Source: Klebsormidium nitens (taxonomy: Eukaryota > Plantae > Klebsormidiophyceae). Taken from it: a DNA stretch of 64,000 nucleotides. The DNA lies in NCBI GenBank assembly GCA_000708835.1, contig DF237072.1, positions 121,779 through 185,778 on the forward strand. Reading direction: 5' to 3'. The position numbers were made by a program, and so were the translations under genes. Below are positions 7,954 through 52,357 of this stretch, piece by piece. Within the stretch, counting starts at the first letter, position 1, and every line of letters begins with the position of its first letter. The notes under the pieces were generated by a model. That model saw only the letters and a program-made list of their open reading frames with translations, was not told where the DNA came from and did not search any database.

Positions 7954-8299
7954 CTGCTGCACGTCGTTTGCAGCACTCTTTGCTGTCAGCTGAGTAGTAG
8001 AGATCTAGCTTTTAGAAAGCAAGCTCCCAAGTCAAGGTGTCGGTGTCAGCAGCTGCTAGTCAATGAGCTGTCGGGGCGCACACCGCTGGGCTGTTTGAAT
8101 TCTACCGCTTGAGTGGGCAGTGCGCGCGGCAGCTTTGCAGCGGGCAGGCACTCTGTAGACACTCACATACAGAGAAGGACAGCGAGGGCTCTCCGAATAC
8201 GACATGCACTTCCAGCAGTGGTTGCGAGGAGTAGCGACGCATTAGCGGCCGGCGCCACAACATTTATCACAGTGCTCACTTGGTTCAGCAGCCAGCTAC

Positions 8300-11990: not shown

Positions 11991-14900
11991 ATGACCTACC
12001 CCCAACTTACGCGCCCGGAAAAGGTTTCCCGAGGCACGCACCGCTCGCTCGCCCGCGCCGCCCTTGCCGCCCTCGTGCTGATGTTGTCTTTAGTGGGGAC
12101 GGCGGCCCGGGGGATCCCCCTGTCCGCTGACGTCACACTTGCGCCCGCGCAAACAACAGAAGGGATCGAGGAGGCGGTCATCCGTGTTGCCCGTTCCGAC
12201 CCAGGCTGGACCCAGGAAGATGACGTTGCGGCTGACGTCATCGTGCCGTTCGTTGGTGTGAACGCCAACATGATGAACGACCGGAGGCGCACGGAGTGGC
12301 CGGTGCAGAGCTATGGGGCGGCGCTGCGGGTGGGTCACCACTAACCGAAGATGGTTATCGGCCAAACCCGGCAAGTTGTAAAGGAACTCCAATGAAAGTC
12401 AACGACTCAAAAGTGTCCAAAGGAGCGAGTTCCTTACCTGTGGAGAAAATCCAACTCCATATAGTAGTGGGAAAACGAGTCAGAAAAAGACCCGGCCGTA
12501 AAGACACGAACGTCCAAAAAGTGATGGCCGTTGGATAGCTGCTAGACCGTGCTCGACGGATTCACGACTGACAGATTTTGCAAGTCTTGAAGATGCTAGG
12601 TCGACAGCTCAAGTCCATGCATAGATTTTGGAAGATTCTGACGTGCAAAACGCCGTTTGGACTCAGTAACTTCTTTTCGTGAACGGTAGATTTAGCAACA
12701 GTTTCAGTCCTCCTTTGTCGCCTGAGAGACCGCTCGAGATCAGACCCTTGGAGAGCAGGGAAAGCCAGATCTCGACAATCGTTACGCTTTTCATTGTAAT
12801 CCAGATAACAACATTACCCCCCCCCCCCAATCTTTCAGGAGCTCGGAGCTGGCATCGTTCGCTACCCGGGGGGTGACATGGCGGACTCGTACATGTGGTC
12901 GGTACCCCCCTTCGCAAAATCCGATCCTAGGATGGCACGAGTCGGGCCTGAGGAAGTTCCGTGCTGGGGTAACCTTCGCTTCCTCTTTCCTGCTAAGTGT
13001 TTTTGTCCCTGCTAGATGTTTTCTGTCAGCAGCAAGCACTCTCCTCTTCGCTGGATTTTGTAGGACCGTTCTTTGTTTCAAGATCGCACTGAAAGTGGCT
13101 CAAGAGAGCGCTGCTCAACAGAGTGCTTCCAGAGCGCAAATGTTTTGTCCCATTGCACACACTCTTTTGAGGTGCGCCCCTTCGAGCATCAATGACTCGT
13201 TACTTTCGCTCAATCTGCGCAAATCGGAATACGTGAGGCGCGTCTCAAAACGATCGGGCTCCAATGAAGCATTTGCGCCCGCCTAATCTCTGCTCGGACT
13301 CCTCCTTACCCCGCTCTTTGAATCTCCAGATGACCCAACCGAAGGCAACATGTCATACACTTGGCTCGGCTGCGACCCGCGCCAAATCGACTTCCCCCTC
13401 GAGTTACACCCCCAAACCCTTGGTTTTGACGACTTCATGACGTCAGCAAGCCAGGCGGGTTCCGCTGTTAACCTGGTGGTTCCGCTGGACGGAGCGTCGG
13501 AGTTCAACGACGACGACCACGTTCGGACGCGGAGCGTCGGAGCGGCGGAGCTTTTGGAGACGTCGGTAGCATGGGTGAGTGGTTTGGATTAACTCAACTC
13601 CTACTCATCGGCTCAACTTTGATTATTGAAAAGCTTTTCGAACAGAAACGAAGTGGAAGCCCGCGAAGCACAGACGAAGTTGGATGAGGCAGTAACCCTC
13701 AAAAGTGGCTAAACGCGATCCTCCCTTCTGAACCCGAAAGAAGCTTCTCCAAGTCTGGGAACAGAACACAAGGCTCAACGCTGCACTTTTGCACGGCAGA
13801 TTCTCTCAGCGCTGCAGATTTGCGCTGCAAATTTGCTCAGGGCTCGAAACACTGTGCATTCCACTTTCGCCCATCAAACGAAAAGCTCAGTGGTATTTCG
13901 TGGTTCGGCCGTCTCTTTCAAGGCGTCGGTTTCGCACTTTCTGCTTTCCTTCGTGCTGACCGGTACGTACCGTCTCTGCCACCAGGTCACCTACTGCAAA
14001 GACAAATACAACGTCACCCTGTGGGAGGTTGGGAACCAGCCAAACGAGCGGCTTTCGAGCGGCGACTTCGCTCACTGGCTTTTCCGGTATAGTGTCGCCA
14101 TGAAGGCTGTTAACCCGGGCATCAAGATCGGGGTTTCGGGCGACGATCCGGAATGGCTGGACGACGTACTGAACCGAGTGGGCGCCCACGTCGACTGGAT
14201 CAGCGTCAGTGCGTCGCCCTTGAGAGGTGCGTTTGACTGTTTTAGCACAGGAACCTTTTGTCATTAACCAGGATTGGTTCAAGGGCCTCGAACCGGACAT
14301 TTTGAACGTTTTCCTGGTAGCTACATGGGGGAAACTTACCAAACCCCAAATCCAGCTTGGTTGGTGCTGACTCTCTTCCTGTGCAGCCCTGACTTTCGAT
14401 GATCAAGTGTGCACGTTTCGAGGAGTTTCAATCTCTTTATGTTTACGATAACGGGGACGGTAAAGGTGCTGCTTAAGGAATGCATGCGGTGAGGCGTAGG
14501 TTCGAATCTCGGGGGAAGTATACTGGATTCGAAGTACAGAAATCGGCTGGGAAAGGTTTGAAAGCAGATGGGGAAGAGGATTCAACTATCACGCATGAGC
14601 TGACCGACAAGCGATCAGAAGGCTTCGTAGATCCAAAGCTACAATCCCGAACAGAAGAAAACCCAAAAAACGCTTCAAATGCTGAGACTTTGCAGAGCAA
14701 GATCTTTCTAGGTAGGCCTCGCTGCTGGTATGAGTGTAGTACAGTCATGGCGATCTAGTTTGTAGTGCTCACTTGCAACGGCGCTGGGGACGATCCTAGT
14801 CCGTAGCCTCAGCCCATGAAAAACCCATCTCGAAAACCCCTGCCCACTCATTAAAGAGGTTCCGCAAGACCTTTTTTCTGCAGACTTCCTCAGCTATGCA

Positions 14901-17204
14901 GACTACCTCGCATCGTCGAACCAAGCGCCGCCGCCGTTCGAGGCACTACGTCAGGTCCTACGCAAACATTCGTAAGCCGTTCTAACTTTCAGGCCAAAAG
15001 GACCTTAGTCCGCCCTATAAATATGCCCTATAAATATGCCCTATAAATATGCCCCGTCCAATCTGCTATCTCAGACGGTGAAATTCGACTCTGGAAGCAT
15101 ACCCGCTTCGCTGGTCAATTGAGCAATCGCTTCATCCCAATGTCGCTTGCTGAAAACGCTGTTTGCTGGCTTAAATTCCAAGAAACGTGAAGTTGAGAGC
15201 GGAATGTATTCGGATGCCGTCTCTCGTTCGTCCGTTTGGCGCATATGTCGTGCGCAGAACATTTCTTACAAGCGGGATAAAGCCGTTGAGTCCTCCGTTT
15301 TGATCGAGCGGACTATTCAAAATGGAGTTTTGGGCTGGCAAGAGCCTCTACTCTTGAAATGTGGCACATAATCGCCTCTCACAGAGAAAAAACTAAGTCG
15401 CGCTCCGGAACCGATAGATACCGGACCGTTCAACGGGCGTGATTCCGGCTCAGTTTGAAACCGAAAAGCTTGCAAGTCGCACAAGTTCAAGGATAGACTT
15501 CCGGAGAAGTTTCACTAGAGCGACGTCATGCTCCAGCTCGCACAAGGCTAGCAAGGAGCGTACAGAAAGCATCCATCGCTCGCAGAACATCTCGAAATCT
15601 CTTCAAACCCTGCACCCTCAAATAAAATGTCGTCATATCTCTCCAGCGCCGACCGTGGCGTGCCGCTCTGGTTCGCTGTGACGTCACTCTCCGCGGCCGG
15701 AGACACGTGGGCGGACGCCGACCCCGTCCGGCGCGCGCTCGCGTTTTCGGACGAGCTCCTGCGCCACGCGGCCACGCCGGGCGTTCGATTCTTACAAGTA
15801 TGTACCTTGACCGTGAAGTACGGAGTTTTTTCTGTAATCAGTCACCGGTGCCTTACGTCTGACAGCTCATTGCTGAGGCCTTTCTAACAAGCCCGTTGCC
15901 ATCTCGGCTTCAGCCCCGCAACTCTCGCGCGCGTGAGCGCGACGTTAGGATCCTTTTGACCGTAGAGGTGAAGAGAGACTCTGCAGAATTCAATTTGACA
16001 CAATCTTTTCCCCTAAGAGGAAGGTTAATAATTAAGTAGCATTCCCTGAGTACCAAATAATCGGATCGTAACCCAAGAAATGCGCGCGCGCGCCCTTTCC
16101 TTGCAGTTCTCCATGACCAAATGGTTCAACGACAACGACCCGCTGAGCTCCGCCTTCGCGGCGACCAACGCGCTCACGCTGGTGGGCGAAGCGGTCGCCC
16201 TTGTTTCGAACGCGCTTTCCGCTTCCGGTGGGGTGAAGCTCCGCGCTACCACCTCCGTTCCGCTACTCAGCGCGTACTTCGCAATCGACCGGTGAGCTAT
16301 TACTCTGATTCTGCTGAAGTCAAGGGGATATTTTCCAGAGGGTTTGTAACGCACGACCTTAACGGGTGCATGATAAGAACATCGCAAGTCCAATTGAATT
16401 GCGAAGTAGCTGCCCATTTCAGTCGCACTTTCTGATCTGGAGCGACTGTAACGACTTTCATCGTTCTCGGCACGCACTTACCGTTTAGCTTGGTCTGGCG
16501 ATCATCAAAGGTACCAGATTTCTTCGTTCTTTCATGACCACTGGAAATGGTACCGCCGTACGATTCGACTTCGTGCCCTCTTTGGGGTCCACTGTCGCTC
16601 ACTGTACTTGCTTAGAAAGACCCAGTATTTCCTTTCTTTTGTTAAACCAAATAATTCTGCCGGATCTTGTTACGTCCCATCTATACGTTGCAAACAAATC
16701 TCTTTCTGTCGGTACAAAGCGTTTCCTTTCTCTCCGCAGCGTACGGGATCCGTCAATCTGAAGAGTACATTCTAGACGAGAACTACGACGAGAAGTGATA
16801 CACCTCTCCAATGTTTTTGTTTGTCCTTTCAACTCTAAACAGTCAGTCCATCGCATCATACGCTTTACCATCCCACTCAATCCGGTAATGTACCTTCCAG
16901 GACCAAAAAAGAAGCGTCCGTCGTTCTTGTCAACCACGGTGGGAGGACGCGTGTCAAGCTGCAGCTGAACGACATCTTTACAACCGCAGAAGGAGAGTTG
17001 CCGGGAAAATTTGGATGGGAGGCCTCGTCATTCGCACTGCGTCCCGCCAAAAGCGCAGACGGCGCCTTGGAAAGGTGGCAGAGACCGCTCGTACAGGGCC
17101 TCGATGTGGACGCCGCAATCGGAGCCGTACACGTGGAAGTCCCGGAGACGTCTTTGGTGTCCGTAAGGATCACGAAGACGATACGTGGCAGAGCTGATGA
17201 ATTG
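11991..17204 (+). CDS. Module 1: signal peptide + clan-A GH (GH51/GH39-like) TIM barrel + C-terminal beta-sandwich
   Basis: Hydrophobic AALAALVLMLSLVGTAA after basic residues. Motifs IVRYPGGDMADSYMW, LGFDDFM, VTLWEVGNQP, AMKAVNPGIKIG, DWISV and SVVLVN...VPETSLVSVRI. Confidence 0.8.
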
Positions 17205-20200
17205 GTGAGGGCTGACGCTTTTCTGAACTTGGTTGAACACCGCAAGCCTTGAGCCGGGGCTGAAGGGTTAAGTCTGGACAGGGATCAGTAGTGCTTCAAA
17301 GCAGTGGTTTGCGAAAGACAAGAAGTGTTCAGACGCTATAGAAGCTCGAAATCTTCCGTGCCTTTGTGATGGATGGAAAATCTCCACCGGTTTCAGCATG
17401 ATGAATGTGATGCATCAAGTCCTTGTCTTTCTTGTACAGAGACCGGAGAACGACACCCTCCAGCAGTTCAGAGCTTTGAATCTTTCCCGTGCTCCTGTTC
17501 GAAGCTGAAAAAATGGGAGATAATTCAGTTCAATAACACTAACGCAATCCTTGTCGGTTTCTACAGACCGGCAGAACAACCCCCTCCGTCGCGCCTCCTC
17601 GCGGCCGCTACCTTGTCCTCACCGACAACCTGGCGAGCCCATTCACACCGTACATCCTCCGCATCCAGGACCTGATGCGCTCGCTGACAGCACCGGGGCA
17701 CGAGGTGAGAAAACGCTATTTGGCAATACTGTTACTAACATGTGCCTTTTCACACCGTACATCTTCAGGGTCTGTTGCTCTTTCACTTACACGCCCCGTA
17801 AGTAGAGGGCCTCGATCCTGCTTGAGAGATTCCTCGACTTCGGAGGTTCTCTGCTTGAGGTCCCTTTAATACTTTCAAGTGGTGGGAGAAGTCGTTCTCT
17901 TGTTTCTGGCGCGTTACAATTTGAAGGGAAAGTGCATGTTTAGTAACAAAACCCAGAACTGAGGAACCAGGACACAGCAGAGAATCCTTGTTTGCGAAGG
18001 AGTAGAAGCGTCAGAGACTCGAGTTTCCGTCCTCAGGTTGTTCACTTCCTGGAAACAAGCGATGACGTCAAGTGCCCCGACGCGACACGTCAGCAGCATC
18101 TGGAAGAGACCGGGGCGCTGTGGATGTGCGGCGGCGCGCCGCGGCTCTTCCAGCTGCTGCAGCAGCGCGAGCACGCGCGCGCGGGCTTTGACGCCGTCAT
18201 CATGATGGTGAGCTTGTCCCCTGCTGGCGGCCCCATCAAAACGGAACACTCGAGAGAAAGCGGAACCGGAAACCATTCATAAGCCAAAGTAGTGATGGTT
18301 TATTCCATATGGCTCCATATAAACCAGGTTGTAGTGCCCACCGCAAGTTCAGCCCAGGTGACCAGGTTGCTGAAACGTCCGGATCCGCGACGTCGGGAAT
18401 ACGTTTTTGTTGGAGATTGACAGTACGTAAAATCCTGTCAACCTAAATGCAGATCGCACCCATTCCGGTGTCCACTAACGTGTCAATCTATAGCCAATTC
18501 GCAACTTTCTTTACTGCGCCGTAGCTTGGCCAGAGTGAATGATGACGTGTCTCTAACGACTGATCCACGTTTGAGTAGGGCAGGCACTGGCCATAACGGC
18601 CGCATTGTAAAATGCGCTTCAGCACTCACATTAATTTTGCCGGCATTTCATTCAGCGTTTGGGCGTCCGCTGTACCTTATGACTCAAATAAGTGGCTTCA
18701 CGAAGTGAGGCTTCACACTAAGTTCTCCTGCAATCAAACTAACCTAGATGCTATCCAATGTGCCTAACGTAAACCCAAAATCTTGAAGCAAAGAGAAAAG
18801 AGCCGAATCCGTCATGGCGGAAAGGGAAGGATGAAATGATAAAGCTATCGAGCCCCCAAAAGTACATGCACTGCAAACACAAAGAAAAATTCCTCCCATT
18901 CTTGTTTCACAGCCCTGGTATTGGTTCTCACCCAACCTCTTCGAGCGCCACGTGGACACCATCGCGCAAACCGCGCCCCAAACCGCGCTCGTCGTCCTGA
19001 CCGACGACGCGCACGGCGCACGCGCTGCGCGCCTCTCTGCCGACTTCCAAAAGTATCCCCACCTGCCCTTCTCCCCGGACCCCGACGTCGCGGCGCGCGA
19101 GGCGCGCACGTACGCGCGCGCAGACGTCGTGGTCACCGTCAGCGAGGAGGACGCGCAGCTGGTCTGCGCGCACGTGCGTACGCGCGCGCAGTGCTTTGCG
19201 TGGACGTGGAGCACCAACACGACGCGCGCGCGCGTACCCGCGGCCGCGGAGTTGCCAGGGTTTGGGGCGCGGCGCGGGATGGCGCTCATGGGCGACTTCC
19301 ACAACCCGACGACTGCGACCGCGCTTCAGGTGTGTGTTGCAAATGACGAAGCTTCAATTCTTCAAAAGCAGGCTTTTGCCGAGTAATCTGACCAGCCTCG
19401 GACGGGTGGGGTTAGTTTTGAGGTTTTGGGGTGGGTGCGGGTGCAAAGCAGGTGATTTGTGAACAGGGTCTAGAGCACATTTCTGTTGAAATGAAGAAAC
19501 AGGCTCATCCAGGCGACCAAGAAACCGAGGATGCGCTTCGTTGGTCGCTTAGAAAGCCTGTTGCTCAAAATGCGGAGACCCTGGCGGAACTTTCGCTGGC
19601 CGTTCACTTAAACACACGAGTTGCAGCTGCCACGTGTACGATCTGACGCTCCAGACTGAGTCTCAGGCTTGCTCTTACTGCAGTGGTTCATCTGGAACGT
19701 CCTTCCCGCGCTCCAAGAGCACTTCGACGCAAAGAACGAGCGCGTTCCGCTCACGCTTGTTGGCAGCGGATTCCGGTCGGCTGTCTTCACTCCGTTGCTG
19801 GCTCAGCTTGAACAGGTGAGCGGCAGCAGGTATTCAGACGTATGAGAATAAATTGGCACAGTGAGGATGTTTTCGACGTTCTTTTTGTTGAAAATGCAAC
19901 CCGAGGGAAATGATTTCACATTACCTTTTCGGCGTCAGCGGGTTGTCTGTTGGATCGTATGTATCACGTTGCGACTTAACTTTGTAATAGGGAGAAAATA
20001 ATGAAATTATATCATGGCCGCGCAGAATCTTTGTTGAAAGGGTGCGAGACAAGCCGCTCTTCGTTTGATTTCCTAGTTAAGAAGCCAAGCGAGGGTTGAA
20101 GCCTTCTCATACATAACGAAGACTGACCTCAACTCGATCAACTCTAGTCAAACCCCGTCTAGCGCATATCTAGAGTCGCCCTGAGATCACTAACTTTAGG

Positions 20201-23200
20201 TGACTTGGCCTTCACGAATCTGAAATTCGAAGCCGTAATTCCTTTACAGGCAATCAAGCTGAGCCGCGGCATCGGCCCCCTCGAACTCCAGATCTCTCCG
20301 GAGGGCCCGGAAGCCGTCGCGCTTCTCCAAACGCAGCGCGTAATGCTCGCGCCAGTTCAGGCCGGTACAGGTGTCAATACCAAAGCGTTTTTTGGGTTAA
20401 GCATCGGCCTCCCGGTCGTCTCAACCCGGGCTGCTCTCGGCGGGTATTTCCCGCGAAAAGCGACCGGGGATGGTGGGTGGGAGGTGGTGCCTGAAAGGGA
20501 GTTCTGCGGGAAGAGGATGACGCCGGATGACGTGTTCTTCGTGGGGGCGACGGCGGACGAGTATACGAGGTCACTGATTGAAGCCTACACAAACGAGACG
20601 GTGAGGAACTCAAGTGCACAAAACAGGCCTAGCTTACAGATGGACTAGAGATTTGTGAGAGTAAAAGAATCCTTATGCTGACGTCTCGCTTGTCAGACAG
20701 CTATCCAAAGATGACGTTTTGGTGGGCTCGATTGATTCCCACGAGTTTCTCATGAGAAGTTTCTGCAGATTCTCTCTCTGTCCTATGAGATCTTGAACTT
20801 CTGTCAAGCGCGTGACCAAGAAACATTACTTTAACGCAGTATTGCTTCCGACCTTCTGTAGAGAGAAAGTATTTTGTTCGTAAACTTAGCGGCGTTGAAA
20901 GATCTGAGTGGCCCATGCCAAATCAGTCTAGAAAGTTGACATCTGTTCCAAAATTCTCACGCGAAGTTACTTTGAGTCCCTCTCTTTTCGCACATGCTTA
21001 CCTTGTTGATACGCGCGCTTGATCCAGATGTGCACATCCGATAGTATCTGAGAACACCTCTTCGCAATCTGACCAGCAACCGGTTTTATGCTGAGTTCAC
21101 TTAATTCGAGATGGTCTGAGGCAGACTTGGCAGCTTCGCTGACTTTTGTTTCCGCAACACCTCCACTTCCATGGATGAGACCATCGATCCTTTCCATTCC
21201 TCTCCTCAGGCCTGGACGGATCGTCTGGAAGCATCCCTTGAAGTCGCTTCCTGCCTTATGAACGCCGACGCCCAAGCATCAATCGCGCAGAGACTCACAG
21301 CCGCAGTCGCAAGCGCGCGCGCGAACCTCCAAACTGTAAACCCTACGGGCAACCAGCCGCGCCGAGCGATGCTCCAAAAAGCGCCTGAGATCAAACCCCT
21401 ATCCACCAAAGTTCCGCCGTCCGGTGCTTTAGAATGCAGAAACGGGATGAGAACGCCACGTGGCAGGCTCTCGGATTTCAGCCCGCCAGGCTGGTTCATC
21501 TGGCCGGCCGCGGCCGCGGCGTTCCTGCTGCGCGTCGCCTTGTTCGTCGCCCTAAACCCCGCTGAAACCCTGCAAAGAATCCCGTCTCCTCGAAAGCGGC
21601 TTGAGCCGTCCGCGAGCGCGCGCTCGCATCTTCTGATGGGCGCAAAGAAGCTTTGGTTGGGAATCCTGTTCAAGAACCGGTGGGGCAGTTTCAAGGGCGG
21701 TTTTTCCGTACGGACCTTTCTTCTCGTGGGGCTTATTTACACCGGGTTGGCTTTGATCTTTGCCGGCGGCGCGCACCTTACTTCCTCCCCGGTCGTTAAC
21801 CCGTTTTCCGGCGCCGTTAACCCCTTTTCTGGGCCCGTTGACTACTTCAACCCGAGGGTCGCGGCCGCGAAGGCCGACGCGCTCGCGCACTTGGTCGCGC
21901 CGCCCGTCGATGTGGACTGCTCCTGCGACGGGTTCGATTATTTCCTGGTGATCGGCGTTGCGTCCGCCGCGCACGCGGCCGCCGAGCGCCAGAACGCGCG
22001 CGACACGTGGGCGCGCTTCGGCGAGCTCGTGCCGCGGTGCCCAGTCATGGTGCGCTTCATCGTGGGGCGACACAAGAACGGCACCGTCATGGAGATGGTC
22101 GCCCGCGAAATGGAGGAGTACGGAGATATCGTTCAGGTACGTTCAGAAAGGCACGTCTGTGGGTTCTCTATCTGATCCTTCCACGGAGATTCGTGGATTT
22201 TGAGGGGCTTTCGTCAACTGCTCAGATTTCTTATTTGATCTGCTGTTGTTGAGGAAGTTTCTCGTGCCGGTAGCTCGCGAGCTTTTTGGAAACCGTGACT
22301 GATCGACGTCGTACAAATCACCCCGCAGCTAATCCCTGCATCCCATTCGTGTACCACGTCGAAACACCTTGACTTAGAATGATTTGCCAAAGAGCTCTTC
22401 AGCCAATCCCAAATCTCAGCGGAGGTGGTTAAATCTTGGCTCGTTTTGACATCTTGCTTCCCAGCTATGTGAGTCGTTTCGACATCTAGCTTCCCAGCTA
22501 TTTGAGTCGATTAGAAGAGTGTCGTCTCGCAACGAACAAACGAAGTAGAGTTACTTGCGTAAAAGTGCTGACTCGGACGCATAAGCCGGTCTGCAACTCC
22601 AATTGACAAGCTGCACGGGATTAGCCGCAATCGATAACAAACAGGAAACGCAGAGCAAATGTGTTTCCAAGAACCCGGCCCAAATGATTGTGTCATGTCT
22701 ACAGGATCTGGCCATCGAAGAGAGTTACGATGCGCTCAGCCGAAAGACGGCGGCCTTCCACCGCTGGGCCGCGGAGAACGTCAGCTTCAAGTTCGCATTT
22801 AAGACGGATGACGACATCTTTGTACGCGTGGACCGCCTCGTTTCGGCGCTCTACCAGGCAAGTCTCCGTCAAGGCTTCCACGTTGAGGTGTTTCGTGGTT
22901 CAATGGAATCTGCAGAAACTACATGTGGGCTTACGATCCAAATTTCGAGCCGGAAGGCTTTTTCTGTGGGGTTATACGGTCTTGTTTCCGCAATTCAAAA
23001 GTCTCGCCCAGAATTTTCGCGCGAAACGATTGAGCGAACGTTAGCCACCGCTGCAAAGATGCTATGAAAGTAGCGTCGTCTTGTAAGCGTCGAAAGCCTG
23101 GGGTCACGTGGGTCGCACCGCATAGAGCCATTCTGATATCTGACGCTCAACTGGTCATGAGGCTTCACGAGTGAAACCACGGCTGTTTGCTTTCCGGAAG

Positions 23201-25448
23201 AATCTGGCCCAACCACTGCTTTGGATCAAGTTTTGCGCTGCTTGAGACTTAGAGCAAGCAATATGCGCACTGTTAACGCGCTGCAAACTGCTTCTCCACA
23301 GGTACGAGATCTGCCGCGCGTTTACTGGGGGAACCTGGGCTTCATGAAGATGCCCATCAAGGAACGGTCGGGCGAGTGGGCAAAATGGTACGTGCCAAGG
23401 ATTTTCCAAGGGGCAGAAATTCTATATCACAAATATGCCGGTCCGCCCTTCTCTTCTCTGGGCATATATATATGATGTGGGACCTCATGCATATGCATAG
23501 ATAGAACGCTTGGATCTGCTGTGGGCCTCTGTTGCCTTCTTTCAATCCCGAAGGAAGTCACATCATCAGCTCGGGTGCTTCGATCCTTCTCCCTTCCCAG
23601 AACACCGATCAGACAGCGGTTCAACTATTAACTCCCCAGTCTATCCGTCATCCGACTACTCGAGGAAAGTAATCAAAGAGTTCCTTCAGCAGAATGCCAT
23701 GTTCCAGCAGGAACGTCAGGTTGATTGCCAGATTCAACGCGCTTTCGCAGGGAATTCTTGTCGCTAACCAGGCTTTTACCAGACCCGTTATCCAGGCTTT
23801 GGACAATTAACCAGGCCGCAACCTTGGTTCCAGGCTGGTTACCGCCCCAGTCTGGTTGTTGGAAAAGTGACCGAACTCTAACCAGCCCATAAGCAGCCAT
23901 AGTTCGGGGCCAAAAACTCTTATGTTTGCAAATTTCTGGTCACAGGTACAGCGACTTTTGGCCGGCCGGCGTGCCCTACCCGCTCTTCGGCCGCGGCCAC
24001 GGGTTCGCGCTCTCGCACGATCTGGTGCGCGCGCTCGCGCGCTGGGAGAACAAGCTGGACTGCGCGGGGCTAGAGGACGTGTGCACGGGTGTCCACCTCT
24101 CAAGCGACCACGTGTACGAAGCCACGGGGCGCCAGGTAAGGAGTCCGCGCGCGTGCGGCAGTGGGACTGGATGCCTCGAACTGACCGGAGCCGAATCTTC
24201 TGAAGCTCAGCGTTTCTCAGTTTGAGACAAGGAGCCGTCGTGAGGCCTGACTTTTTAATGGATGTTAAAGCTTTACACCCTGGTACTTCGTCTCGTCGTG
24301 CCGATATTCCTTTCGCTTGTCGTCCTTCGGTAAGAACGCTTCGCTTTTCCGAACACAAAGTAAGAACTCGTGGCCGGAACAGTCTGTTCTCTCGACGCCT
24401 GAGCCAGCCGTCGGACAGGCCGCACCGATCGGACCCATCCTGACCCAAATAGCTTCATTTTTCCGTTCCAACTTTGTGCCGTTTTTCTGATTTGGTCTGA
24501 CAACTGGCAACGGCTCATGTTTACCGAAGTAGTTGCGAAGACGTGGCTCCCCATCGTTGAGGTATGCTCCATGGAGACGCAATATTAAGCGGTCATGAGG
24601 GCCAGGCCCCCTTTCCACAAAGTCTTCACAAGGGCAGAATCATGGTTCACCTAGTTGAAATGGACGAGGTTTCCGGACAATATTCTAACGACGCGGAGCC
24701 TGGCTCAATATTGGCCGGGGGCTGGTTTGAAAGCACCTGTATCTATACCCACGTTGTCCGTTCTCCAAGGACTAGCGTAGTGCACCTGGCGGCGGGAGAT
24801 AAAGGTGCCAAATCTCAGGCTAATGTAAAAGATGAAACTTCGCTGCAATCCGCAACTTGAGCTGATGTGAAAACCCGACCTGCAGCAAGTAAACTCTTCC
24901 CCTCAACGTGGTGCAGCTGACGGAGACCGGGCTGCCCATCTTCGAAGATATTCTCACCGACTGAAACACGGTGACTCTACCAAGTTCAGGGCGATGTGAA
25001 AAGCCGATCCAACTAAAACCTGCCCTGGTATTTTCACCAGGGTCTGAACGTGGTGCACCTGATGGAGACCGGGCTGCCCATTTTTGAGGATATTCTCACC
25101 GACTATGACGACACCCAGTGCGAGGAAGGCATGACGCTCGCGCTGCATCTGAAACGCCCCATCGAAACGATGCGGACGTTTGTACGCACGTACGAGACCT
25201 GCGGACGCATGTGCGGCTGCGGCCGCGGCGCCAAAGGCGTCCGCAACGCGACCGTGATCGCGTCAGGATTTAAGCTCACGCAGATGCGCGCGGCCGCGGC
25301 CGCGGCCGCGTGGCCGTACTTCGACCTCCAAAACCAGGAGACGGAGATGTATCACGACAAGTATGAGTGCTTATTCACACAGGCGGATTACCACAGTGCG
25401 GCGGAGCGGGCTTTGTGCCGCGCGAAGGCGGGCAGGAAATCGTTGTGA
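11991..25448 (+). CDS. Predicted 18-exon multidomain glyco-enzyme (~1,551 aa): SP, GH clan-A-like, GT4-like, TM-TM, GT31
   Basis: Exons 11991-12329, 12839-12968, 13330-13574, 13986-14226, 14884-14971, 15647-15797, 16107-16291, 16901-17204, 17567-17704, 18037-18207, 18913-19329, 19684-19815, 20250-20600, 21210-22136, 22705-22857, 23302-23387, 23946-24135 and 25041-25448. Sum 4,656 nt, every junction phase-compatible, no internal stop. 16 GT-AG introns and 1 GC-AG. Confidence 0.72.
15012..15054 (+). repeat. (GCCCTATAAATAT)x3, three perfect TATA-box-containing units in an intron
   Basis: Perfect 13-bp units at 15012, 15025 and 15038. Confidence 0.9.
17567..21335 (+). CDS. Module 2: GT-B fold, GT4-like glycosyltransferase domain
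   Basis: RYLVLTD..RIQDLMRSLTAPGHEVV, YARADVVVTVSEED, GFGARRGMALMGDFHNP, WFIWNVLP..LTLVGS, MLAPVQAGTGVNTK..SIGLPVVST and YTNETAW. Confidence 0.8.
21694..25448 (+). CDS. Module 3: GT31 (beta-1,3-galactosyltransferase-like) domain with TM and stem
   Basis: TM TFLLVGLIYTGLALIFA, then LVIGVAS..ERQNARDTW, VRFIVG, EMEEYGDIV, ESYDALSRKT, FKTDDDIFV, YWG, YPLFGRGHGFALSHDLV and EDVCTG. Confidence 0.9.
22448..22510. repeat. 33-bp tandem duplication in an intron
   Basis: GACATCTWGCTTCCCAGCTATKTGAGTCG at 22448 and 22481. Confidence 0.85.
24625..25110 (+). repeat. Degenerate ~135-bp tandem echoes of the last-exon acceptor of the multidomain gene
   Basis: Copies of AACGTGGTGCACCTGATGGAG at about 24639, 24774, 24905 and the real exon at 25047. 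The 24905 copy matches about 55 nt of exon. Confidence 0.75.
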
Positions 25449-28400
25449 AAATCTTCACGTATGTGGGGAGAAAGGGGAGGAGACGCGTCTCCCCCTTTTC
25501 TCCTCCGCCTTTCTGCGAGCTTTTCCCCCCAAGGGGGAGACAACTAATCCTCCTTGTGTGCACGTGGGGTTGATGCAAGGTGATTGAAACTGAGGATCTG
25601 GTCTAGTTTTGGTCAATTATAGGTCAGAAAGATAGGTATTAGTACAGCCTGCAACTGCAACTGTTGCCACGTGTAAACGAATACTGTAAGCGCCCGCCAA
25701 GCTAGAGTCTTACGTCGTCAATTACTGAGTTGAGTTGCTTTGGAGAGGTATTTCTAACGCCGCAAAAACATTTTTAAATCTTTCCGCCTGTCGCCCGCCT
25801 GTAGTCGACCGTAGCAGGAGCGATCCGTAGACACGCGACGTCTGCAAGCTTGGGCGATTGTCTTAACTACGTTAAAGCTAGCTTTAGAATAATTGATTAA
25901 GCTTGCTGCTATACTTTGTAACGGAACCGTACGTGTTGGATCTTATTTTGAGTTACATGAATGTCTTTCCCGTGGACGTCCAGAACCTAAGAAACCAGTT
26001 CAGCTTGTAGAGAAGCCAAGTGCCAGGAAATGAAGTGGGCAACAATGACGTGTTTCAATTCTATTCTTGCAACCAGTTGCATGAAAGTTTCAACCAGGCC
26101 GTGCTGCAGAGCAATGCTTACCCAATCAAAGTCCCCTGAGGCCTTCATAAGACCACATGTCAATGCACAACTGTTGTGACCACTTCACTTGAGACGCCCC
26201 AAATAACGGCCAACTTTCACGAGCAAGGGTCGATTCACATTTTTCATTATGCGCATAGGTTTTGTTACCAACGCCTCGTCAAAGCGTGAATCTCGAATCT
26301 TCCCCGTCTAATTTGATCACCCTTCAAATCAAGCTCTGGCTTTGGACGTCCAAATAGAGCTGCGAATCAGCCCTTCGCGTTCTTGTTGATCGAGTTTAAT
26401 GCATGAGTCATTTTCGAAGTGACCGTTATAGAAGACTCTCGTTAGATTTATTTCCCATTTATTTCGTCTGTGATCCGCCGCCGGAACCTCATTCAAGCCC
26501 CCATTCAAGCAATGGCATCTGCAACATTTCGGCCGGCCGCGCCGGTTCGATTACCACGTCTTTGGACACACGCTTCATAAATCATCATATTGCAGGGAGC
26601 CTGCACTGCTCCAGTTCTATGCGGGCCAGTTTGCTCAGTTTCTTGACTCAGTCCCGCGGGCCGACGTTTTGAAACAAGGTGGCGGCCGGGCGCGGCCGGC
26701 TGCCCGGCCGCCTCAGTGCCCGAGGTGAACCTCGCGCCCGGCGGCCGCGGCTTCGGTTGAAACTGGGCAATAGTGGTGGTTAGTAAGAACCATGTTCTGT
26801 GAACCAAACCCTGTAGTTTTGCAGTGGCCCGGCCAGCTCTTGCATAAAACTTTGAAAGTGGGGACTGGGCCAGCATTTGCGCTGAGCGCATTTGCAAGTT
26901 GCAGCATTCCAGTTTCTCTAGAGCTCTTTGTGTTTAACGCAACTCCTCAAGTGCATCACATGATGCATATGTACTGGACTATGCTGCACAGACAATCAGA
27001 ACCGTGCTGGATTGAGGACGAGCAGTTTTTTGCGGCACGGTCTGCCAGCAGTGAGAAGCTGGTGAGTATTCACGCGCCCGTGACGAGAGTACAACGAGAG
27101 GAAGCTCCAGAAAAGAAGTATAGATTGATTTGCTGAAAGGTGATGCTCTTAATTCTTTGAATGCCAGGATTCTGCTATATTTGATATCAAAAGCTTTCAA
27201 AGTTCGAGAATCCTGGTTACATTTCGATTGATTTCCAGCCTTTCTTTGCCCTCAAACAATGCTTGCGTTGCGAATATCACTGAGGAGGTGTTGATCGATC
27301 ATCATGAGTTGAGGGCAGTGCATGTATCAGCTACCGGGCATGACAAAAAGCCCGATGGTTTGTGCCTTTTGAGTCTAGGGCTTCTTTTCAGCTAGCTCGG
27401 CAGCTTTATTGTTTTTGCACAGGTGTCTGTTCAAGCTCCATAAGAATGAACCTTCTGCAACCCCACAAGTTGATCGAGTATAAGTCTGAGGGGCTGCTCA
27501 GTGACTGTGATGATCTTTGCCAAGACAACAGTGACGTTGATTGTGCTCGAAAAGATGATTCCTGTCTACTTGATAGCTCCGTATTGCTGTGTGGTCAAAG
27601 GTTTTCTTGTTGCTTGTATTCCCAGCATTGGAGCTAGTGGTGCACATTTGAAGCTGCCGCTTCTGAACAGTTGCTGCTTGAGGTCAATCTGGCCAGCGGT
27701 CAGTGATGAGACTGGGACCAGGTAGGAACTTGCTTGTCGTTGATCTGGTAGTTGGTTTCACAGCAGCCGCACACAATCCTGATTTTGGAGTCTGTTTGAA
27801 ACTTTGGAATTTGTGGTCCGCAGGCTTGGACAGAATGAGTTGACCAATGATATTGGCAGAGAGTTGAGTGCCAGGAAATTCAGCTGGACTCTGTGTTAGT
27901 ATGCTGATCGCCCTTTCCTCCCTCTCCTCTCTAGCAAGGAGAAGAGTATGGTGTGCATCAGACAAAGGTGCATCGTACCTGGAACGTTGTTCTTGCATGC
28001 TGGAGCTTGGCAGACAAAAGCGAGTTTGGGTTCTCCTTTCAGAAACCGTTGCAATCTCCATCGGAGGCAACACGTGTGTCTTCTGAAAACTACGAGCGCA
28101 TGCAAGGCTTCTCATTCATTGGACTTCTTTTATCGTCTCTTAAGAGGCAGCTGCTTTCGCAAGGGGGTTGGGGAGTTGAATGTCTACCACCATCAGCATA
28201 GTATGGCACCACAGGCGTAATGGCACTGACTTAGGACTTTCTGTGCAGGAGGTAATGTATGCCCCAACGAACCATCATAGACAGCCGGATAGCCTCCTTC
28301 CAGACCAATTTCGGACCTTCCAGATCAACTCTTCTGAGCTCGTCCGGTTCAGAGCTACTTCAAGACCTACTATAACCCTTCAAGAAGTAGAGGTAGCAGC

Positions 28401-29655
28401 CCGTGTTCTTTCGACGAGCTCAATTTCTTCTTAGCTCGTGCGTTTCCGCTTGATACCTGCTCGAATGGTTTTCGGTCTGAAATGAATCTATCACCCTAGG
28501 TTCTATGTTCTTTCTATCCCTGCTCGGTGTTTCTTTGTGTCGAGGATGTTTTGGGTGGATGTGTCTGGCTGTGAAACATAAATCATTTTGTTACCATGTA
28601 TTCAATCTTGGACTTGATTTTCAACAGGGCTTTGCTCGTTGAATGGGCAAAGAGAAGTGTTTTCAATCCTTGCCGGTTACTTTCAGAGGCACGAGCCCTT
28701 TCTCGGACGCAACCTCAGCGATTTTATGCAGTTTTTTTTGGTCAGTGCTGACGGCCCCAGTACTTCTTATTGCGCGCCTTGGTCTCCAGCAGCTATATTC
28801 AAAAAAAGCTAGTCAAATCTTGAGTGTATTTACAGTTGTGAAAGGTCGGCATCCTTGGTTGCCTTCAAAATGTTGATGACCCGCATAGCACACATAGGCA
28901 CGAGATGCGGATGAAGTATCTTCTGATTCCGGTTAGAATACCTTGAACTATCGACAATTATTCTGCAACTGATCCTACTCGGAGCCAGCTTGGCGCTTTC
29001 TCCTGCAGGAATAAACCGTCTCGAACCGTGTACTTCCAGATCATAGTCGCTTCCAAGCCACCAGATTCGAAGATTGCTTCTTTCTGCAGGAATCCTTTCG
29101 TCCAAGTCAAGAGCCCCTGCTGTTGTAAGAGCCGGGATCGCACGGGATCTGGGACTCTGCATCGCCATGATAGTGGCGCTGCCACGGATGGGCGCCATGC
29201 AGAAAGTAAGACCACCTGTTTCAAAGTTAGCACTTTGCGAAGCTTTAGAGGTTTGGAGAATTCAAGCGGCCCACTCCACTTCAGTCAGGTTCTGTTGCAG
29301 CCGGGGGGGGTCCTTTGTGCGTATGGTATTTGTGAATCCACAACGCAGGCCCTACAAGGGGGCACTTTCGTTCACGGGGTGTTGCGTTGTTCCCTTAAGA
29401 TAGTCCAGATTACAAGTGGCATAAATCGACCAAATGCGCTCATTCATTCCCAGTCGGCGTGCCTCGATGCATGCGCGGTCAAATGCTGCCACCAGAAGTT
29501 GCAGACGCAAAGATACCGCATCTCTTCTCCTTTGCCATTTTGGCAGAAACGGAGACCAGCCCCGCCATCGCAACCGTCGACCGCCTTTCTTGAGAACTAC
29601 AGATGGCTGCTGACGCCATGAGGGGTTATATTCGAGCCAAGGGCTCCAGGATAAG

Positions 29656-29978
29656 GTGCGTCTTTCTGGTTGACCGTCATCTATTTGGGCCCTGTGCTTT
29701 GTGGAAGATGCCAGGGATTGGGGCATCAAATGACCCTGACGAGTAAGGGTCTCGGCTTTTTGGAAAAAGCTGTGAGCAGAACCTTAAAGATCTTTTCTTA
29801 TGAGGATATCAAGTCGTGCGTCTTTCTGGTTTGACCGTCATCTATTTGGGCCCTGTCCTTTGTGGAACATGCCAGGGATAGGGGCATCAACGGACCTTGA
29901 CGAGTAAGGTTCTCTGCATTCTTGGAAGAAGCTGTGAGCAGAACCTTCCAAGATCTTTTCTTATGAGAATATCAAGTC
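29656..29978. repeat. 160-bp tandem duplication
   Basis: Units start with GTGCGTCTTTCTGG at 29656 and 29816 and are highly similar throughout. Confidence 0.9.
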
Positions 29979-32607: not shown

Positions 32608-32759
32608 TTATACAACAGTCATAACCCCATCACTTTCGTTGTAAAGGAGCTTGCGCCTTAGTTTTACACCTGGATGCGTTTCATTATACAACAGTCATAA
32701 CCCCATCACCTTCGTTGTAAAGGAGCTTGCGTTTTAATTTTACACCTGGACGCGTTTCA
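32608..32759 (-). repeat. 76-bp tandem duplication containing a donor-like CAG|GTGTAA
   Basis: Units at 32608 and 32684. Donor-like sites at 32745 and 32669 on the minus strand. Confidence 0.85.
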
Positions 32760-50290: not shown

Positions 50291-50397
50291 AAGGAAAGTC
50301 ACCGAGTGCAGCTACCTAGAACGTGCGCTCAGCAGAGGCTAGTACTAGACGAGGCCTGTATTGTTTGTTCATTTCTTCAAGGAAAGCGCCAGCCACT

Positions 50398-52280: not shown

Positions 52281-52357
52281 TAGTGTGCACTTTGGACAGG
52301 TTGAATTATTTTCTACTTGTACCCAGCTTGTTCACTACCTTAAGGAAAGCGCAAGCC

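What the first reader, a model, noticed from the sequence alone, without database searches (positions are those of the whole stretch)
11991..25448. A ~1,550-aa three-module glycan-synthesis protein: pseudo-hydrolase + GT4 + GT31 in one spliced ORF
Seen: 18 exons with canonical or GC-AG junctions join in phase with no stop. The GH-like exon 8 ends in a donor rather than a stop. GT4 exon 13 (..YTNET|GTGAGG) splices in phase 0 onto 21210, and that exon runs 927 nt without a stop from the GT4 terminal helices into GT31. Known: GT31 enzymes are normally single-domain type II Golgi proteins, and GT4 enzymes are retaining GT-B enzymes. I do not recall this three-module architecture. Inference: a luminal assembly line in which two transferases extend a glycan while an inactive GH domain binds or measures the chain, loosely like bacterial multi-domain polysaccharide polymerases.
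Basis: partly seen in the sequence, partly recalled or inferred. Interest (0 to 1): 0.9.

Follow-up and report, generated by a model that had tools for sequence, protein, structure and literature searches.

The report
Three-module glycan enzyme gene, conserved
One conserved 18-exon gene encodes a roughly 1,550-residue membrane protein that joins a probably inactive sugar-cutting domain to two different sugar-adding domains, a combination I found in no database or paper, though its function is untested.

Summary
Eighteen exons (11991-25448, + strand; 16 GT-AG and 1 GC-AG intron) join into a 1,551-codon ORF with one terminal stop.

An RNA contig shows the key GT-B to GT31 splice (20600 to 21210), but at depth 3 in one run. 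No RNA covers the GH to GT-B splice (17204 to 17567). That join rests on comparison:
- Three relatives' loci hold the exons in the same order.
- Every junction keeps its place and phase.
- One relative's spliced ORF is also open (1,422 aa).
- Exon 9 has no start codon in three loci.
- All modules are under purifying selection (dN/dS 0.13-0.23; linker 0.44).

The modules:
- **GH51-like domain.** The acid/base Glu is a conserved Gln. Loss of the nucleophile is not shown.
- **GT-B domain.** It belongs to the Glycos_transf_1 (GT4-like) clan but has no acidic residue where the EX7E motif should be, so "GT4" is not established.
- **Hairpin.** Two hydrophobic helices flank a basic loop.
- **GT31 domain.** Its motifs are intact, and B3GALT6 is the nearest solved structure.

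An exhaustive search of 1.84 billion proteins found the fusion exon only in unannotated relatives' contigs. Function is untested.

This is a new variant of multidomain Golgi glycosyltransferases, of moderate interest. The scan's two earlier notes here are readings of this same stretch, not of other DNA.

The parts
11991..12329 (+). Exon 1: ATG, basic N-terminus, hydrophobic signal-anchor (aa 20-38), start of the GH-like module
   Evidence: The end of the exon is conserved in the relative. The relative has its own N-terminal hydrophobic exon.
12839..12968 (+). Exon 2: GH-like module, the ...RYPGG... strand
   Evidence: It is 85% identical in the relative, and the junction is conserved in phase 1.
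13330..13574 (+). Exon 3: GH-like module
   Evidence: A PDB search with its profile found nothing.
13986..14226 (+). Exon 4: GH51-like strand with the acid/base position. The Gln codon at 14037-14039 replaces the catalytic Glu (WEVGNQ).
   Evidence: Profile A3 matches GH51 arabinofuranosidases 4atw, 3s2c and 3ug3 at E=2.9e-7, with GNE aligned to GNQ. GNQ is invariant in 3 loci.
14884..14971 (+). Exon 5: GH-like module
15647..15797 (+). Exon 6: GH-like module. The conserved LWFAVTSLS stretch is the presumed nucleophile strand and has no Glu.
   Evidence: It is invariant in 3 loci. It has no PDB match, so the assignment is an inference.
16107..16291 (+). Exon 7: GH-like module, C-terminal part
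16901..17204 (+). Exon 8: end of the GH-like module. It ends in the donor TTG|GTGAGG, not in a stop.
   Evidence: A donor sits at the same place and in phase 0 in two relatives, and the sequence after it is not conserved.
17567..17704 (+). Exon 9: start of the GT-B module (first strand RYLVLTD...). There is no in-frame ATG before it.
   Evidence: It is 84-89% identical in relatives.
18037..18207 (+). Exon 10: GT-B N-terminal domain
18913..19329 (+). Exon 11: GT-B N-terminal domain to the start of the C-terminal domain
   Evidence: Pfam Glyco_transf_4 scores only E=0.054. Atlas features match GT-B/GT4-clan clusters at 0.93-0.87. Alignment A1 has 84% mean column identity.
19684..19815 (+). Exon 12: GT-B C-terminal domain
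20250..20600 (+). Exon 13: GT-B donor-binding region (…APVQAGTGVNTKAFFGLSIGLPVVST…), with no acidic residue where EX7E would lie. It ends YTNET|GTGAGG.
   Evidence: The best Atlas hit is a Glyco_trans_1_4 cluster at 0.97. Pfam scores E=0.051. Alignment is A2. An RNA joint links it to 21210.
21210..22136 (+). Exon 14, the fusion exon: terminal helices of GT-B, a linker, two hydrophobic helices around a basic loop, a stem, and the first about 75 residues of GT31
   Evidence: It is a 927-nt open frame. RNA contigs cover 21209-21334 (spliced to exon 13) and 21653-21856. The frame is open and conserved in 5 other loci. The linker has dN/dS 0.44. Pfam PF01762 scores 24.8 bits.
21498..21554 (+). First hydrophobic helix of the hairpin (aa 1061-1079), with an invariant Arg inside it
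   Evidence: Kyte-Doolittle score 2.07 here, 1.5-1.65 or below threshold in relatives. Alignment is A6.
21717..21773 (+). Second hydrophobic helix (aa 1134-1152), the type-II-like anchor of the GT31 module
   Evidence: Kyte-Doolittle score 1.66-2.36 in all loci. The preceding loop is rich in Arg and Lys.
22705..22857 (+). Exon 15: GT31 core with the DDD motif (codons 22807-22815) and a GC donor
   Evidence: Pfam PF01762 scores 33.9 bits. Profile A7 matches B3GALT6 9sp7 at E=7.6e-6 with DDD aligned. The exon is 86-98% identical in 4 loci.
23302..23387 (+). Exon 16: GT31 (…VYWGN…)
23946..24135 (+). Exon 17: GT31 (…YPLFGRGHGF…, …LEDVCTG…)
   Evidence: Pfam PF01762 scores E=0.0093. Alignment is A8.
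25041..25448 (+). Exon 18: end of GT31, a conserved Cys-rich tail, and the stop codon
   Evidence: It is 75% identical in relatives. The tail has dN/dS 0.18.

Best explanation
This is one gene, not a cluster. Its 18 exons encode a protein of about 1,551 residues that enters the secretory pathway through an N-terminal signal-anchor. In order, the protein carries:
1. A GH51-like (clan GH-A) domain whose acid/base Glu is a conserved Gln. It most likely binds a glycan and does not cut it.
2. A GT-B domain of the Glycos_transf_1 (GT4-like) clan that lacks the acidic EX7E pair.
3. A hairpin of two hydrophobic helices around a strongly basic loop. The hairpin dips to the cytosolic side and returns the chain to the lumen.
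4. A canonical GT31 domain with intact RxxW, DDD and EDV motifs.

The single gene, the module order, conservation, purifying selection and the GT-B to GT31 splice are shown; I put the three-module ORF itself at about 0.8.

The following are inferred, at about 0.35-0.4:
- All three modules face the Golgi or ER lumen.
- The GT31 module is a metal-dependent inverting beta-1,3-glycosyl (probably galactosyl) transferase.
- The GT-B module either adds a second sugar or holds the acceptor.
- The dead GH51 domain acts as a lectin that tethers the transferases to an arabinofuranose- or galactan-type glycan.

The confidence given for this field (0.6) is for architecture and mechanism taken together.
For: The ORF joins in frame with canonical sites. 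An RNA contig shows the 20600 to 21210 joint.

Relatives keep the same architecture:
- The merged locus L005+L002 and locus L007 hold the exons in the same order. L001 and L006 hold exons 11 or 13 through 17.
- All junctions have the same place and phase.
- The relative's spliced ORF from exon 2 to 18 is open, 1,422 aa.
- Neither exon 9 nor the open frame just upstream of it has a Met before the first GT-B strand, in three loci.
- The only Met placed to start a GT31-only protein just before the second helix (MGAKK) is absent in 4 of 6 loci.
- In L007 a stop lies two codons upstream of the exon 14 acceptor.

dN/dS is 0.23 for the GH-like module, 0.15 for GT-B, 0.44 for the linker and 0.13 for GT31.

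Domain evidence:
- The exon 4 profile matches GH51 structures at E=2.9e-7, with GNE aligned to GNQ.
- Atlas features match GT-B clusters at 0.97 and 0.93.
- Pfam PF01762 matches three exons.
- B3GALT6 is the best solved match, with DDD aligned.
- There are three hydrophobic segments, and the loop between the last two is basic.
Against: - RNA support is thin. It consists of one 259-nt contig at depth 3 for one junction and one unspliced 204-nt contig inside exon 14. There is nothing for exons 1-12 or 15-18.
- Continuity of one transcript from exon 1 to exon 18 is not shown.
- The first hairpin helix is only marginally hydrophobic in relatives and holds an invariant Arg. If it does not span the membrane, the modules would sit on opposite sides.
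- The GT-B module lacks the EX7E acidic pair and has no Pfam hit above threshold, so it may not be a transferase.
- Nucleophile loss in the GH-like domain is not demonstrated.
- No structure of the spliced protein could be predicted, because it has no reference in these tools. The fold of exon 13 alone failed (pLDDT 34.7).
- An in-frame ATG at 21171 inside intron 13 would allow a shorter isoform.
Confidence: 0.6

Rival explanations
1. The GT-B/GT31 fusion is real, but the GH51-like part is a separate upstream gene. Exon 8 would be its last exon, ending at the stop at 17250-17252, and the GT-B/GT31 gene would start from an exon I did not recognise.
For: No RNA contig covers 17204/17567, and no listed run holds that stretch. 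Unspliced, exon 8 would reach a stop after 15 more codons. The 25 residues around the join are the least conserved part of the protein, at 36% identity.
Against: The gap is only 362 nt. It would have to hold a 3' UTR, a promoter, a first exon and an intron. Exon 9 has no ATG before the first GT-B strand in the window, L005+L002 or L007. A strong donor (GTGAGG/GTGAGC) sits at the same place and in phase 0 in all three loci, and the sequence after it is not conserved. The joined frame is open in both species tested.
Confidence: 0.1
2. Besides the long protein, or instead of it in most conditions, an internal start produces a stand-alone type-II GT31 enzyme. This would come from a transcription start in intron 13 or exon 14, with translation from the ATG at 21171 or a Met within exon 14.
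For: The second hydrophobic helix plus the basic stretch before it looks like an ordinary GT31 signal-anchor. An in-frame ATG lies at 21171 with no stop before exon 14. The X2 contig at 21653-21856 is not linked to any upstream exon. A Met in the conserved CLM motif is invariant.
Against: The only junction read seen joins exon 13 to exon 14. The whole first 190 codons of exon 14 are conserved in frame in six loci, with dN/dS 0.44, which a 5' UTR would not be. The MGAKK Met is not conserved. In L007 a stop lies just upstream of the acceptor.
Confidence: 0.15
3. Three neighbouring genes form a conserved cluster. The in-frame joins are an artefact of choosing splice sites freely, and the RNA joint is rare read-through splicing.
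For: With GT/AG sites this frequent, some in-frame path can often be found. Expression is very low.
Against: All 17 junctions are at the same residue and phase in a relative with only 60-70% protein identity. Neither downstream module has a conserved start codon or upstream stop. The fusion exon is conserved end to end in six loci. The gaps between modules are ordinary introns of 362 and 609 nt.
Confidence: 0.04
4. A decaying or non-functional fusion: a pseudogene, or a dead relic of a hydrolase attached to a working GT31.
For: The catalytic Glu is lost in the GH-like domain. EX7E is missing from the GT-B module. Expression is very low.
Against: No stop or frameshift occurs in 1,551 codons here or in 1,422 codons in the relative. 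dN/dS is 0.13-0.23 in every module, and the substitutions GNQ and LWFAVTSLS are themselves invariant.
Confidence: 0.03

Closest known systems
Animal bi-domain Golgi glycan polymerases: chondroitin synthases CHSY1/3 and CHPF (GT31 + GT7), LARGE1/2 (GT8 + GT49), EXT1/2 and EXTL3 (GT47 + GT64)
   Same: They are type-II secretory-pathway proteins with two different glycosyltransferase folds in one chain. One of these groups uses a GT31 domain. The two domains add alternate sugars. This comes from established knowledge; papers PMC13389171 and PMC9178029 appeared and I did not read them in full.
   Different: None has a GH-like domain. None pairs GT31 with a Glycos_transf_1-clan GT-B domain. None has a membrane hairpin between the modules. 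No sequence relation beyond the GT31 fold was found.
Fungal alpha-1,3-glucan synthase Ags1/Mok1 (GH13-like domain + GT5 synthase + membrane domain)
   Same: A GH-derived domain and a GT-B domain of the same broad clan sit in one membrane protein, with membrane segments between or after the modules (my own knowledge).
   Different: In Ags1 the GH13-like domain is extracellular and thought to be an active transglycosylase, the GT5 domain is cytosolic, and there is a multi-pass pore. Here the hydrophobic segments suggest that all modules are on one side. The GH part is GH51-like and lacks its acid/base Glu. A third module (GT31) is present.
GH51 alpha-L-arabinofuranosidases (for example the Thermotoga enzymes 4atw, 3s2c and 3ug3; plant ARAF1/ASD1)
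   Same: The exon 4 profile aligns to the strand carrying the GNE acid/base motif at E=2.9e-7. The N-terminal RYPGG-type strand is also present.
   Different: The acid/base Glu is Gln in all three loci that cover it. No Glu was found at the presumed nucleophile strand. The C-terminal half has no Pfam or PDB match. The domain is fused to transferases and is not a free secreted hydrolase.
GT31 beta-1,3-glycosyltransferases, nearest solved: B3GALT6 (9sp7), then B3GNT2
   Same: Pfam PF01762 is above threshold. The RxxW, DDD and EDV motifs are present. A type-II-like anchor and stem lie directly upstream.
   Different: The anchor is preceded by about 1,130 residues of other modules. A conserved 90-residue Cys-rich tail follows. 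Only nine proteins in 1.84 billion matched the exon at E<=1e-3.
Catalytically dead GH-fold proteins used as binders (chitinase-like lectins of GH18, heparanase-2 of GH79)
   Same: A clan GH fold has its catalytic Glu replaced, and that replacement is conserved under purifying selection. The comparison itself is from my own knowledge.
   Different: Those are free proteins. Here the dead domain is built into a transferase chain, and binding was not tested.

Membership tests
GT31 (CAZy) / Pfam Galactosyl_T PF01762 | Pfam PF01762 match above the gathering score | tested here: met
   24.8 bits (cut-off 23) for the end of exon 14 and 33.9 bits for exon 15. Exon 17 is weaker at E=0.0093.
GT31 (CAZy) / Pfam Galactosyl_T PF01762 | DxD metal/nucleotide-sugar motif, plus the N-terminal RxxW and the (E/D)D(V/A)xxG motifs | tested here: met
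   FKTDDDIF is invariant in 5 loci and aligns to the DDD of B3GALT6. ARDTWA and LEDVCTG are conserved. The definition of the motifs comes from my own knowledge of the family.
GT31 (CAZy) / Pfam Galactosyl_T PF01762 | Type-II membrane anchor and stem directly before the catalytic domain | tested here: met
   The hydrophobic helix at aa 1134-1152 scores 1.66-2.36 in all loci and is preceded by a basic stretch. It lies inside a longer chain and not at the N-terminus.
GT31 (CAZy) / Pfam Galactosyl_T PF01762 | Beta-1,3-glycosyl transfer activity | not testable with these tools
   This needs an enzyme assay.
GT4 (CAZy), retaining GT-B | Match to Glycos_transf_1, Glyco_trans_1_4 or Glyco_transf_4 models above threshold | tested here: not met
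   The best scores are 14.3 and 14.0 bits against cut-offs of 27 and 28.5, on single exons only. PDB profile searches of exons 11 and 13 found no glycosyltransferase at a significant E-value.
GT4 (CAZy), retaining GT-B | GT-B (two Rossmann-like halves), Glycos_transf_1-clan character | tested here: inconclusive
   Language-model features put exon 13 at 0.97 with Glyco_trans_1_4 clusters, and all ten best hits share the clan. Exon 11 scores 0.93-0.87 with GT4-clan clusters. No fold test was possible: the AF2 model of exon 13 alone had pLDDT 34.7.
GT4 (CAZy), retaining GT-B | EX7E acidic pair in the donor-binding stretch before the G-x-PVV strand | tested here: not met
   The stretch RVMLAPVQAGTGVNTKAFFGLSIGLPVVSTRAALGGYFPRKATG holds no Asp or Glu in the window, L001, L006 or L005+L002. 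The expected place of the motif comes from my own knowledge.
GH51 alpha-L-arabinofuranosidase (clan GH-A) | Sequence homology to GH51 catalytic domains | tested here: met
   The exon 4 profile matches 4atw, 3s2c and 3ug3 at E=2.9e-7, and other GH51 entries more weakly. Only this exon gives a match.
GH51 alpha-L-arabinofuranosidase (clan GH-A) | Catalytic acid/base Glu in the GNE motif | tested here: not met
   It aligns to Gln (WEVGNQ), which is invariant in three loci.
GH51 alpha-L-arabinofuranosidase (clan GH-A) | Catalytic nucleophile Glu on strand 7 | tested here: inconclusive
   The presumed strand (LWFAVTSLS, exon 6) has no Glu and is invariant. The exon gave no PDB or Pfam match, so the alignment is by position only.
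Multidomain (bifunctional) Golgi glycosyltransferases | Two glycosyltransferase folds in one translated chain | tested here: met
   The RNA joint between exons 13 and 14 lies in an open frame. The fusion exon is conserved in six loci. That both folds are catalytically active was not tested.

The most novel reading that the evidence does not exclude
The protein is a self-contained co-polymerase for a lineage-specific wall or matrix glycan. The GT31 and GT-B modules would add two sugars in alternation, as chondroitin synthase or LARGE do. The dead GH51 domain, frozen in a substrate-binding state by its Glu-to-Gln change, would clamp the growing chain and so give processivity or set its length. 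The membrane hairpin would hold the two active sites at a fixed distance on the luminal face.
Probability: 0.15. Interest if true: 0.8.

Novelty: new variant of a known kind. Interest (0 to 1): 0.55.

Why it matters
Multidomain glycosyltransferases build some of the most important extracellular polymers, and each known pairing defined a new polymer pathway. This is a pairing not seen before: a GH51-like binder, a GT-B domain, a membrane hairpin and a GT31 domain. It is conserved and under selection in a small group of organisms, and the family has no annotated member in a 1.84-billion-cluster protein library.

If the organism is a green-lineage alga, as the neighbouring GT47 gene faintly suggests, the protein could belong to an unknown route of arabinogalactan-like or other wall glycan synthesis. 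It is also a natural case of a glycosidase turned into a probable lectin by the same Glu-to-Gln change that biochemists use to trap substrates.

The value is limited because activity, substrate, localisation and even the full-length transcript remain untested, and lineage-specific CAZyme fusions are not rare in algae and protists.

Tried and rejected
**RNA**
- Two run searches and two lays were used. Only two short contigs fell on the gene.
- Nothing fell on 12300-18250, and no run was listed as holding 16880-17720. The GH to GT-B splice therefore could not be tested with RNA.

**Whole-protein analyses**
- The spliced protein has no reference in these tools, and I did not type it in. As a result there is no Pfam or dbCAN scan, no structure prediction and no fold search of the whole protein or of whole modules. 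All domain calls rest on single exons.
- AF2 on exon 13 alone, with 3 sequences, gave pLDDT 34.7. I discarded the model and ran no fold search on it.

**Sequence and literature searches that found nothing useful**
- PDB sequence or profile searches with exons 3, 6, 11, 13 and 17.
- Pfam on exons 2-10 and 18.
- Scans of JGI metagenome contigs with the exon 14 and exon 11 alignments.
- Rfam and tRNA scans of the window, run to get a lineage marker.
- Paper searches for the domain combination and for the relatives' sample accessions.

**Ideas rejected**
- The overlap in tblastn between exon 13 and exon 14 in L001 is not a duplication. It is read-through into the intron.
- Alternative exon 2/3 junctions (12934 or 12940 to 13404) were rejected because the relative conserves the peptide across 12968/13330.
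- The pseudogene reading was rejected on dN/dS and the open frames.

**Lineage**
- The organism was not identified. The best named relatives of the neighbouring GT47 are land-plant IRX10-like proteins at 31-35% identity.

Full report
**1. What is in the sequence**

The window is eukaryotic, about 52% G+C and rich in introns. I listed the stop-free stretches on the + strand between 11500 and 26000. I then scored every GT/GC donor and AG acceptor pair that keeps the frame.
- It starts at the ATG at 11991 and stops at 25446-25448.
- It is 4,656 nt, or 1,551 codons, with a single terminal stop.
- Sixteen introns are GT-AG and one is GC-AG, with its donor at 22857.
- Exon 8 ends at TTG|GTGAGG (17204).
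- Exon 13 ends YTNET|GTGAGG (20600) and meets 21210 in phase 0.
- Exon 14 is 927 nt without a stop.

**2. RNA evidence**

- Of 24 listed RNA runs of the same (coded) organism, two hold words of 20100-22200.
- In run X1, one 259-nt contig (depth 3, no mismatch) joins 20467-20599/20600 to 21209/21210-21334 and skips 609 nt with GT..AG ends. In run X2, a 204-nt contig lies inside exon 14 at 21653-21856. The GT-B to GT31 splice is therefore real.
- No run is listed as holding 16880-17720. Four runs gave no contig anywhere in 12300-18250.
- The gene is very weakly expressed in the public data. The GH to GT-B splice and the continuity of one transcript remain untested by RNA.

**3. Relatives and comparative gene structure**

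I searched exon 14 exhaustively against 1.84 billion cluster representatives. Only nine proteins matched at E<=1e-3:
- Three are exon-shaped ORFs called on unannotated genomic contigs (P0001-P0003).
- Six are weak matches of the 70-residue GT31 start to giant tandem multi-GT31 proteins.

The word-indexed search added P0010 (79% identity) and P0011 (60%). Their contigs come from three data sets:
- L001 and L006, both from one Logan run.
- L002/L003/L005 and L007, from two large contigs of one JGI sample.
- L004, from another Logan run.

tblastn of my model shows the exons in the same order and orientation:
- Exon 1 (its 3' part) through exon 18 in L005+L002.
- Exon 4 through exon 18 in L007.
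- Exon 13 through 17 in L001, and exon 11 through 17 in L006.

In the merged relative locus every junction lies at the homologous residue with the same phase and canonical sites. The poorly conserved exon 8/9 join was placed by hand at GAG|GTGAGG ... TTGCAG|TTG, phase 0. The relative's spliced ORF from exon 2 to 18 is open for 1,422 codons.

L007 shows the same exon 8 donor and exon 9 acceptor in phase 0. L007, L001 and L006 all show the same exon 13 donor and exon 14 acceptor.

Three observations speak against separate genes:
- The frame of exon 9 has no Met between the upstream stop and the first GT-B strand in the window, L005+L002 and L007.
- The sequence after the exon 8 donor is not conserved, which an unspliced coding end would be.
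- The whole of exon 14, including about 190 non-catalytic codons, stays in frame in six loci.

In addition, the Met that could start a stand-alone GT31 just before its anchor occurs only in the window and L006. In L007 a stop lies two codons upstream of the acceptor.

Nei-Gojobori estimates between the window and the relative give these dN/dS values:

| Region | dN/dS |
|---|---|
| GH-like module | 0.23 |
| GT-B module | 0.15 |
| Non-catalytic part of exon 14 | 0.44 |
| GT31 module | 0.13 |
| C-terminal tail | 0.18 |

None of the modules is decaying.

**4. The modules**

*GH-like module (exons 1-8).*
- Single exons give no Pfam hit.
- Exon 4 matches GH51 alpha-L-arabinofuranosidase structures, and a three-sequence profile does so at E=2.9e-7.
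- The GH51 motif GNE, whose Glu is the catalytic acid/base (family knowledge), aligns to GNQ, which is invariant in the three loci.
- The stretch I take for the nucleophile strand (LWFAVTSLS in exon 6) is invariant and has no Glu. It gave no database match, so loss of the nucleophile is an inference.

*Middle module (exons 9-13 plus the first helices of exon 14).*
- Pfam Glyco_transf_4 and Glyco_trans_1_4 appear only at E about 0.05. PDB searches give nothing.
- Protein-language-model features place exon 13 with Glyco_trans_1_4 clusters at 0.97 (182 of 256 features, all ten best hits in one clan). They place exon 11 with the same clan at 0.93-0.87.
- I therefore call it a GT-B domain of the Glycos_transf_1 (GT4-like) clan.
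- The 44-residue donor-binding stretch that ends in GLPVVST...KATG holds no acidic residue in any locus. Canonical GT4 enzymes carry EX7E there (family knowledge).
- CAZy GT4 membership and catalytic competence are therefore open.

*GT31 module (end of exon 14 to exon 18).*
- Pfam PF01762 is above its gathering score.
- The RxxW, DDD and EDV motifs are present and conserved.
- The best solved relative is B3GALT6, with DDD aligned, at E=7.6e-6. B3GNT2 follows at about 0.09.

**5. Topology (inferred)**

Kyte-Doolittle scans find three hydrophobic segments:
- aa 20-38, which follows five basic residues.
- aa 1061-1079.
- aa 1134-1152.

The 54 residues between the last two are rich in Arg and Lys. 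By the positive-inside rule the chain would run as follows:
1. The N-terminus is on the cytosolic side.
2. The GH-like and GT-B modules are on the luminal side.
3. The first helix of the hairpin crosses to the cytosolic side.
4. The basic loop lies in the cytosol.
5. The second helix crosses back, placing GT31 in the lumen.

The weak point is the first hairpin helix. It is marginal in relatives (1.5-1.65, or below threshold) and carries an invariant Arg.

**6. Most likely function**

I commit to a secretory-pathway glycan-building enzyme with these roles:
- The GT31 module is an active inverting beta-1,3-glycosyl (probably galactosyl) transferase.
- The GT-B module either adds a second sugar or holds the acceptor.
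- The GH51-derived domain, disabled at its acid/base, binds the glycan as a lectin.

| Claim | Status |
|---|---|
| One gene | Shown |
| Module order | Shown |
| Conservation | Shown |
| Purifying selection | Shown |
| GT-B to GT31 splice | Shown |
| Intact GT31 motifs | Shown |
| Glu to Gln at the acid/base position | Shown |
| Luminal topology | Inferred |
| Donor and acceptor sugars | Inferred |
| Lectin role of the GH51-like domain | Inferred |
| Activity of the GT-B module | Inferred |

I put about 0.8 on the three-module ORF and about 0.35-0.4 on the mechanism.

**7. Comparison with what is known**

- It works like the bi-domain Golgi polymerases (chondroitin synthases GT31+GT7, LARGE GT8+GT49, exostosins GT47+GT64).
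- In joining a GH-derived domain to a GT-B domain in a membrane protein, it is like fungal Ags1 (GH13+GT5).
- It is a member of GT31 by every feature I could test.
- It is homologous to GH51 but fails the catalytic-residue test.
- It is of the GT4 clan but fails the EX7E test.
- I found no paper and no database protein with this combination. The searches cannot see fusions whose linker exon differs.
- Unchecked notes of this scan mention other multidomain transferases elsewhere in the same genome, so such fusions may be a habit of this lineage.

**8. Lineage**

The organism is coded and I could not identify it. There were no Rfam or tRNA hits. The neighbouring GT47 gene has close relatives only in the same kind of unannotated contigs. 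Its best named relatives are land-plant IRX10-like proteins at 31-35% identity. This fits a green-lineage organism but does not prove it.

**9. Verdict**

| Item | Judgement |
|---|---|
| Observation | Confirmed |
| Novelty | New variant of a known kind (multidomain Golgi glycosyltransferase) |
| Interest | 0.55 |

It is a clean, conserved and previously undescribed architecture with an unusual dead-hydrolase module. Its function is unknown, its expression is very low, and it has no bearing yet on a long-standing question.

Noticed in passing
window 7216-7962 (- strand): An exon of a GT47 exostosin-type glycosyltransferase (Pfam PF03016, E=1.6e-22) lies about 4 kb upstream of the three-module gene's start, on the opposite strand, so the two genes diverge. 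Close relatives (70-75% identity) exist only on unannotated Logan and JGI contigs. The best named relatives are land-plant IRX10-like proteins at 31-35%. It is not next to the three-module gene in the relatives' loci.
   Followed up: partly
window 24905-24962: A 58-nt copy (91% identical) of the first coding bases of exon 18 sits about 140 nt upstream of that exon, inside intron 17. It would encode ...NVVQLTETGLPIFEDILTD and then a stop. It looks like a small local duplication or a dead alternative exon.
   Followed up: partly
window 1305-2321, 50323-51255, 52130-53270, 56097-56738 (+ strand): Four paralogous intron-poor ORFs have an N-terminal F-box-like motif (Pfam PF12937, E=2e-5 to 3e-4) and a shared unknown C-terminal part. 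Three of them lie within 7 kb of one another.
   Followed up: no
L005+L002 (merged coordinates 17825-18524) and L007 8208-8883: Exon 13 is split by an extra phase-1 intron in these two loci of the JGI sample, but not in the window, L001 or L006. In L005+L002 exon 1 is also split, with the hydrophobic N-terminus on a separate upstream exon near L005 6800-6950. This indicates intron gain or loss within the family.
   Followed up: partly
L001 and L006 (one Logan run); L002/L005 and L007 (one JGI sample): Each of two samples holds two diverged copies of the gene. Exon 14 identity to the window is 64% and 80% in the Logan run, and 60% and 63% in the JGI sample. These are either two paralogues per genome or two related organisms per sample. 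A second copy in the window's own genome was not looked for.
   Followed up: no
P0004-P0009 (hits): These are very long proteins (686-2,159 aa) made of up to six tandem GT31-like domains behind one N-terminal anchor. They are the only non-family matches to the GT31 start of exon 14. Their source organisms are unknown.
   Followed up: no
window 26000-42000 and 42000-46000: There is a long run of negative AT skew (-0.09 to -0.16; T exceeds A on the + strand), followed by a sharp drop in GC skew (-0.14 to -0.20). There are no long ORFs with Pfam hits and only one short tandem repeat (32608-32759, period 76). This is unexplained.
   Followed up: no
L002 16215-20569: Two to six kb downstream of the relative's gene lie ORFs with integrase (rve), PHD and DNA-methylase domains on the opposite strand. 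They look like a retroelement or a related mobile element.
   Followed up: no
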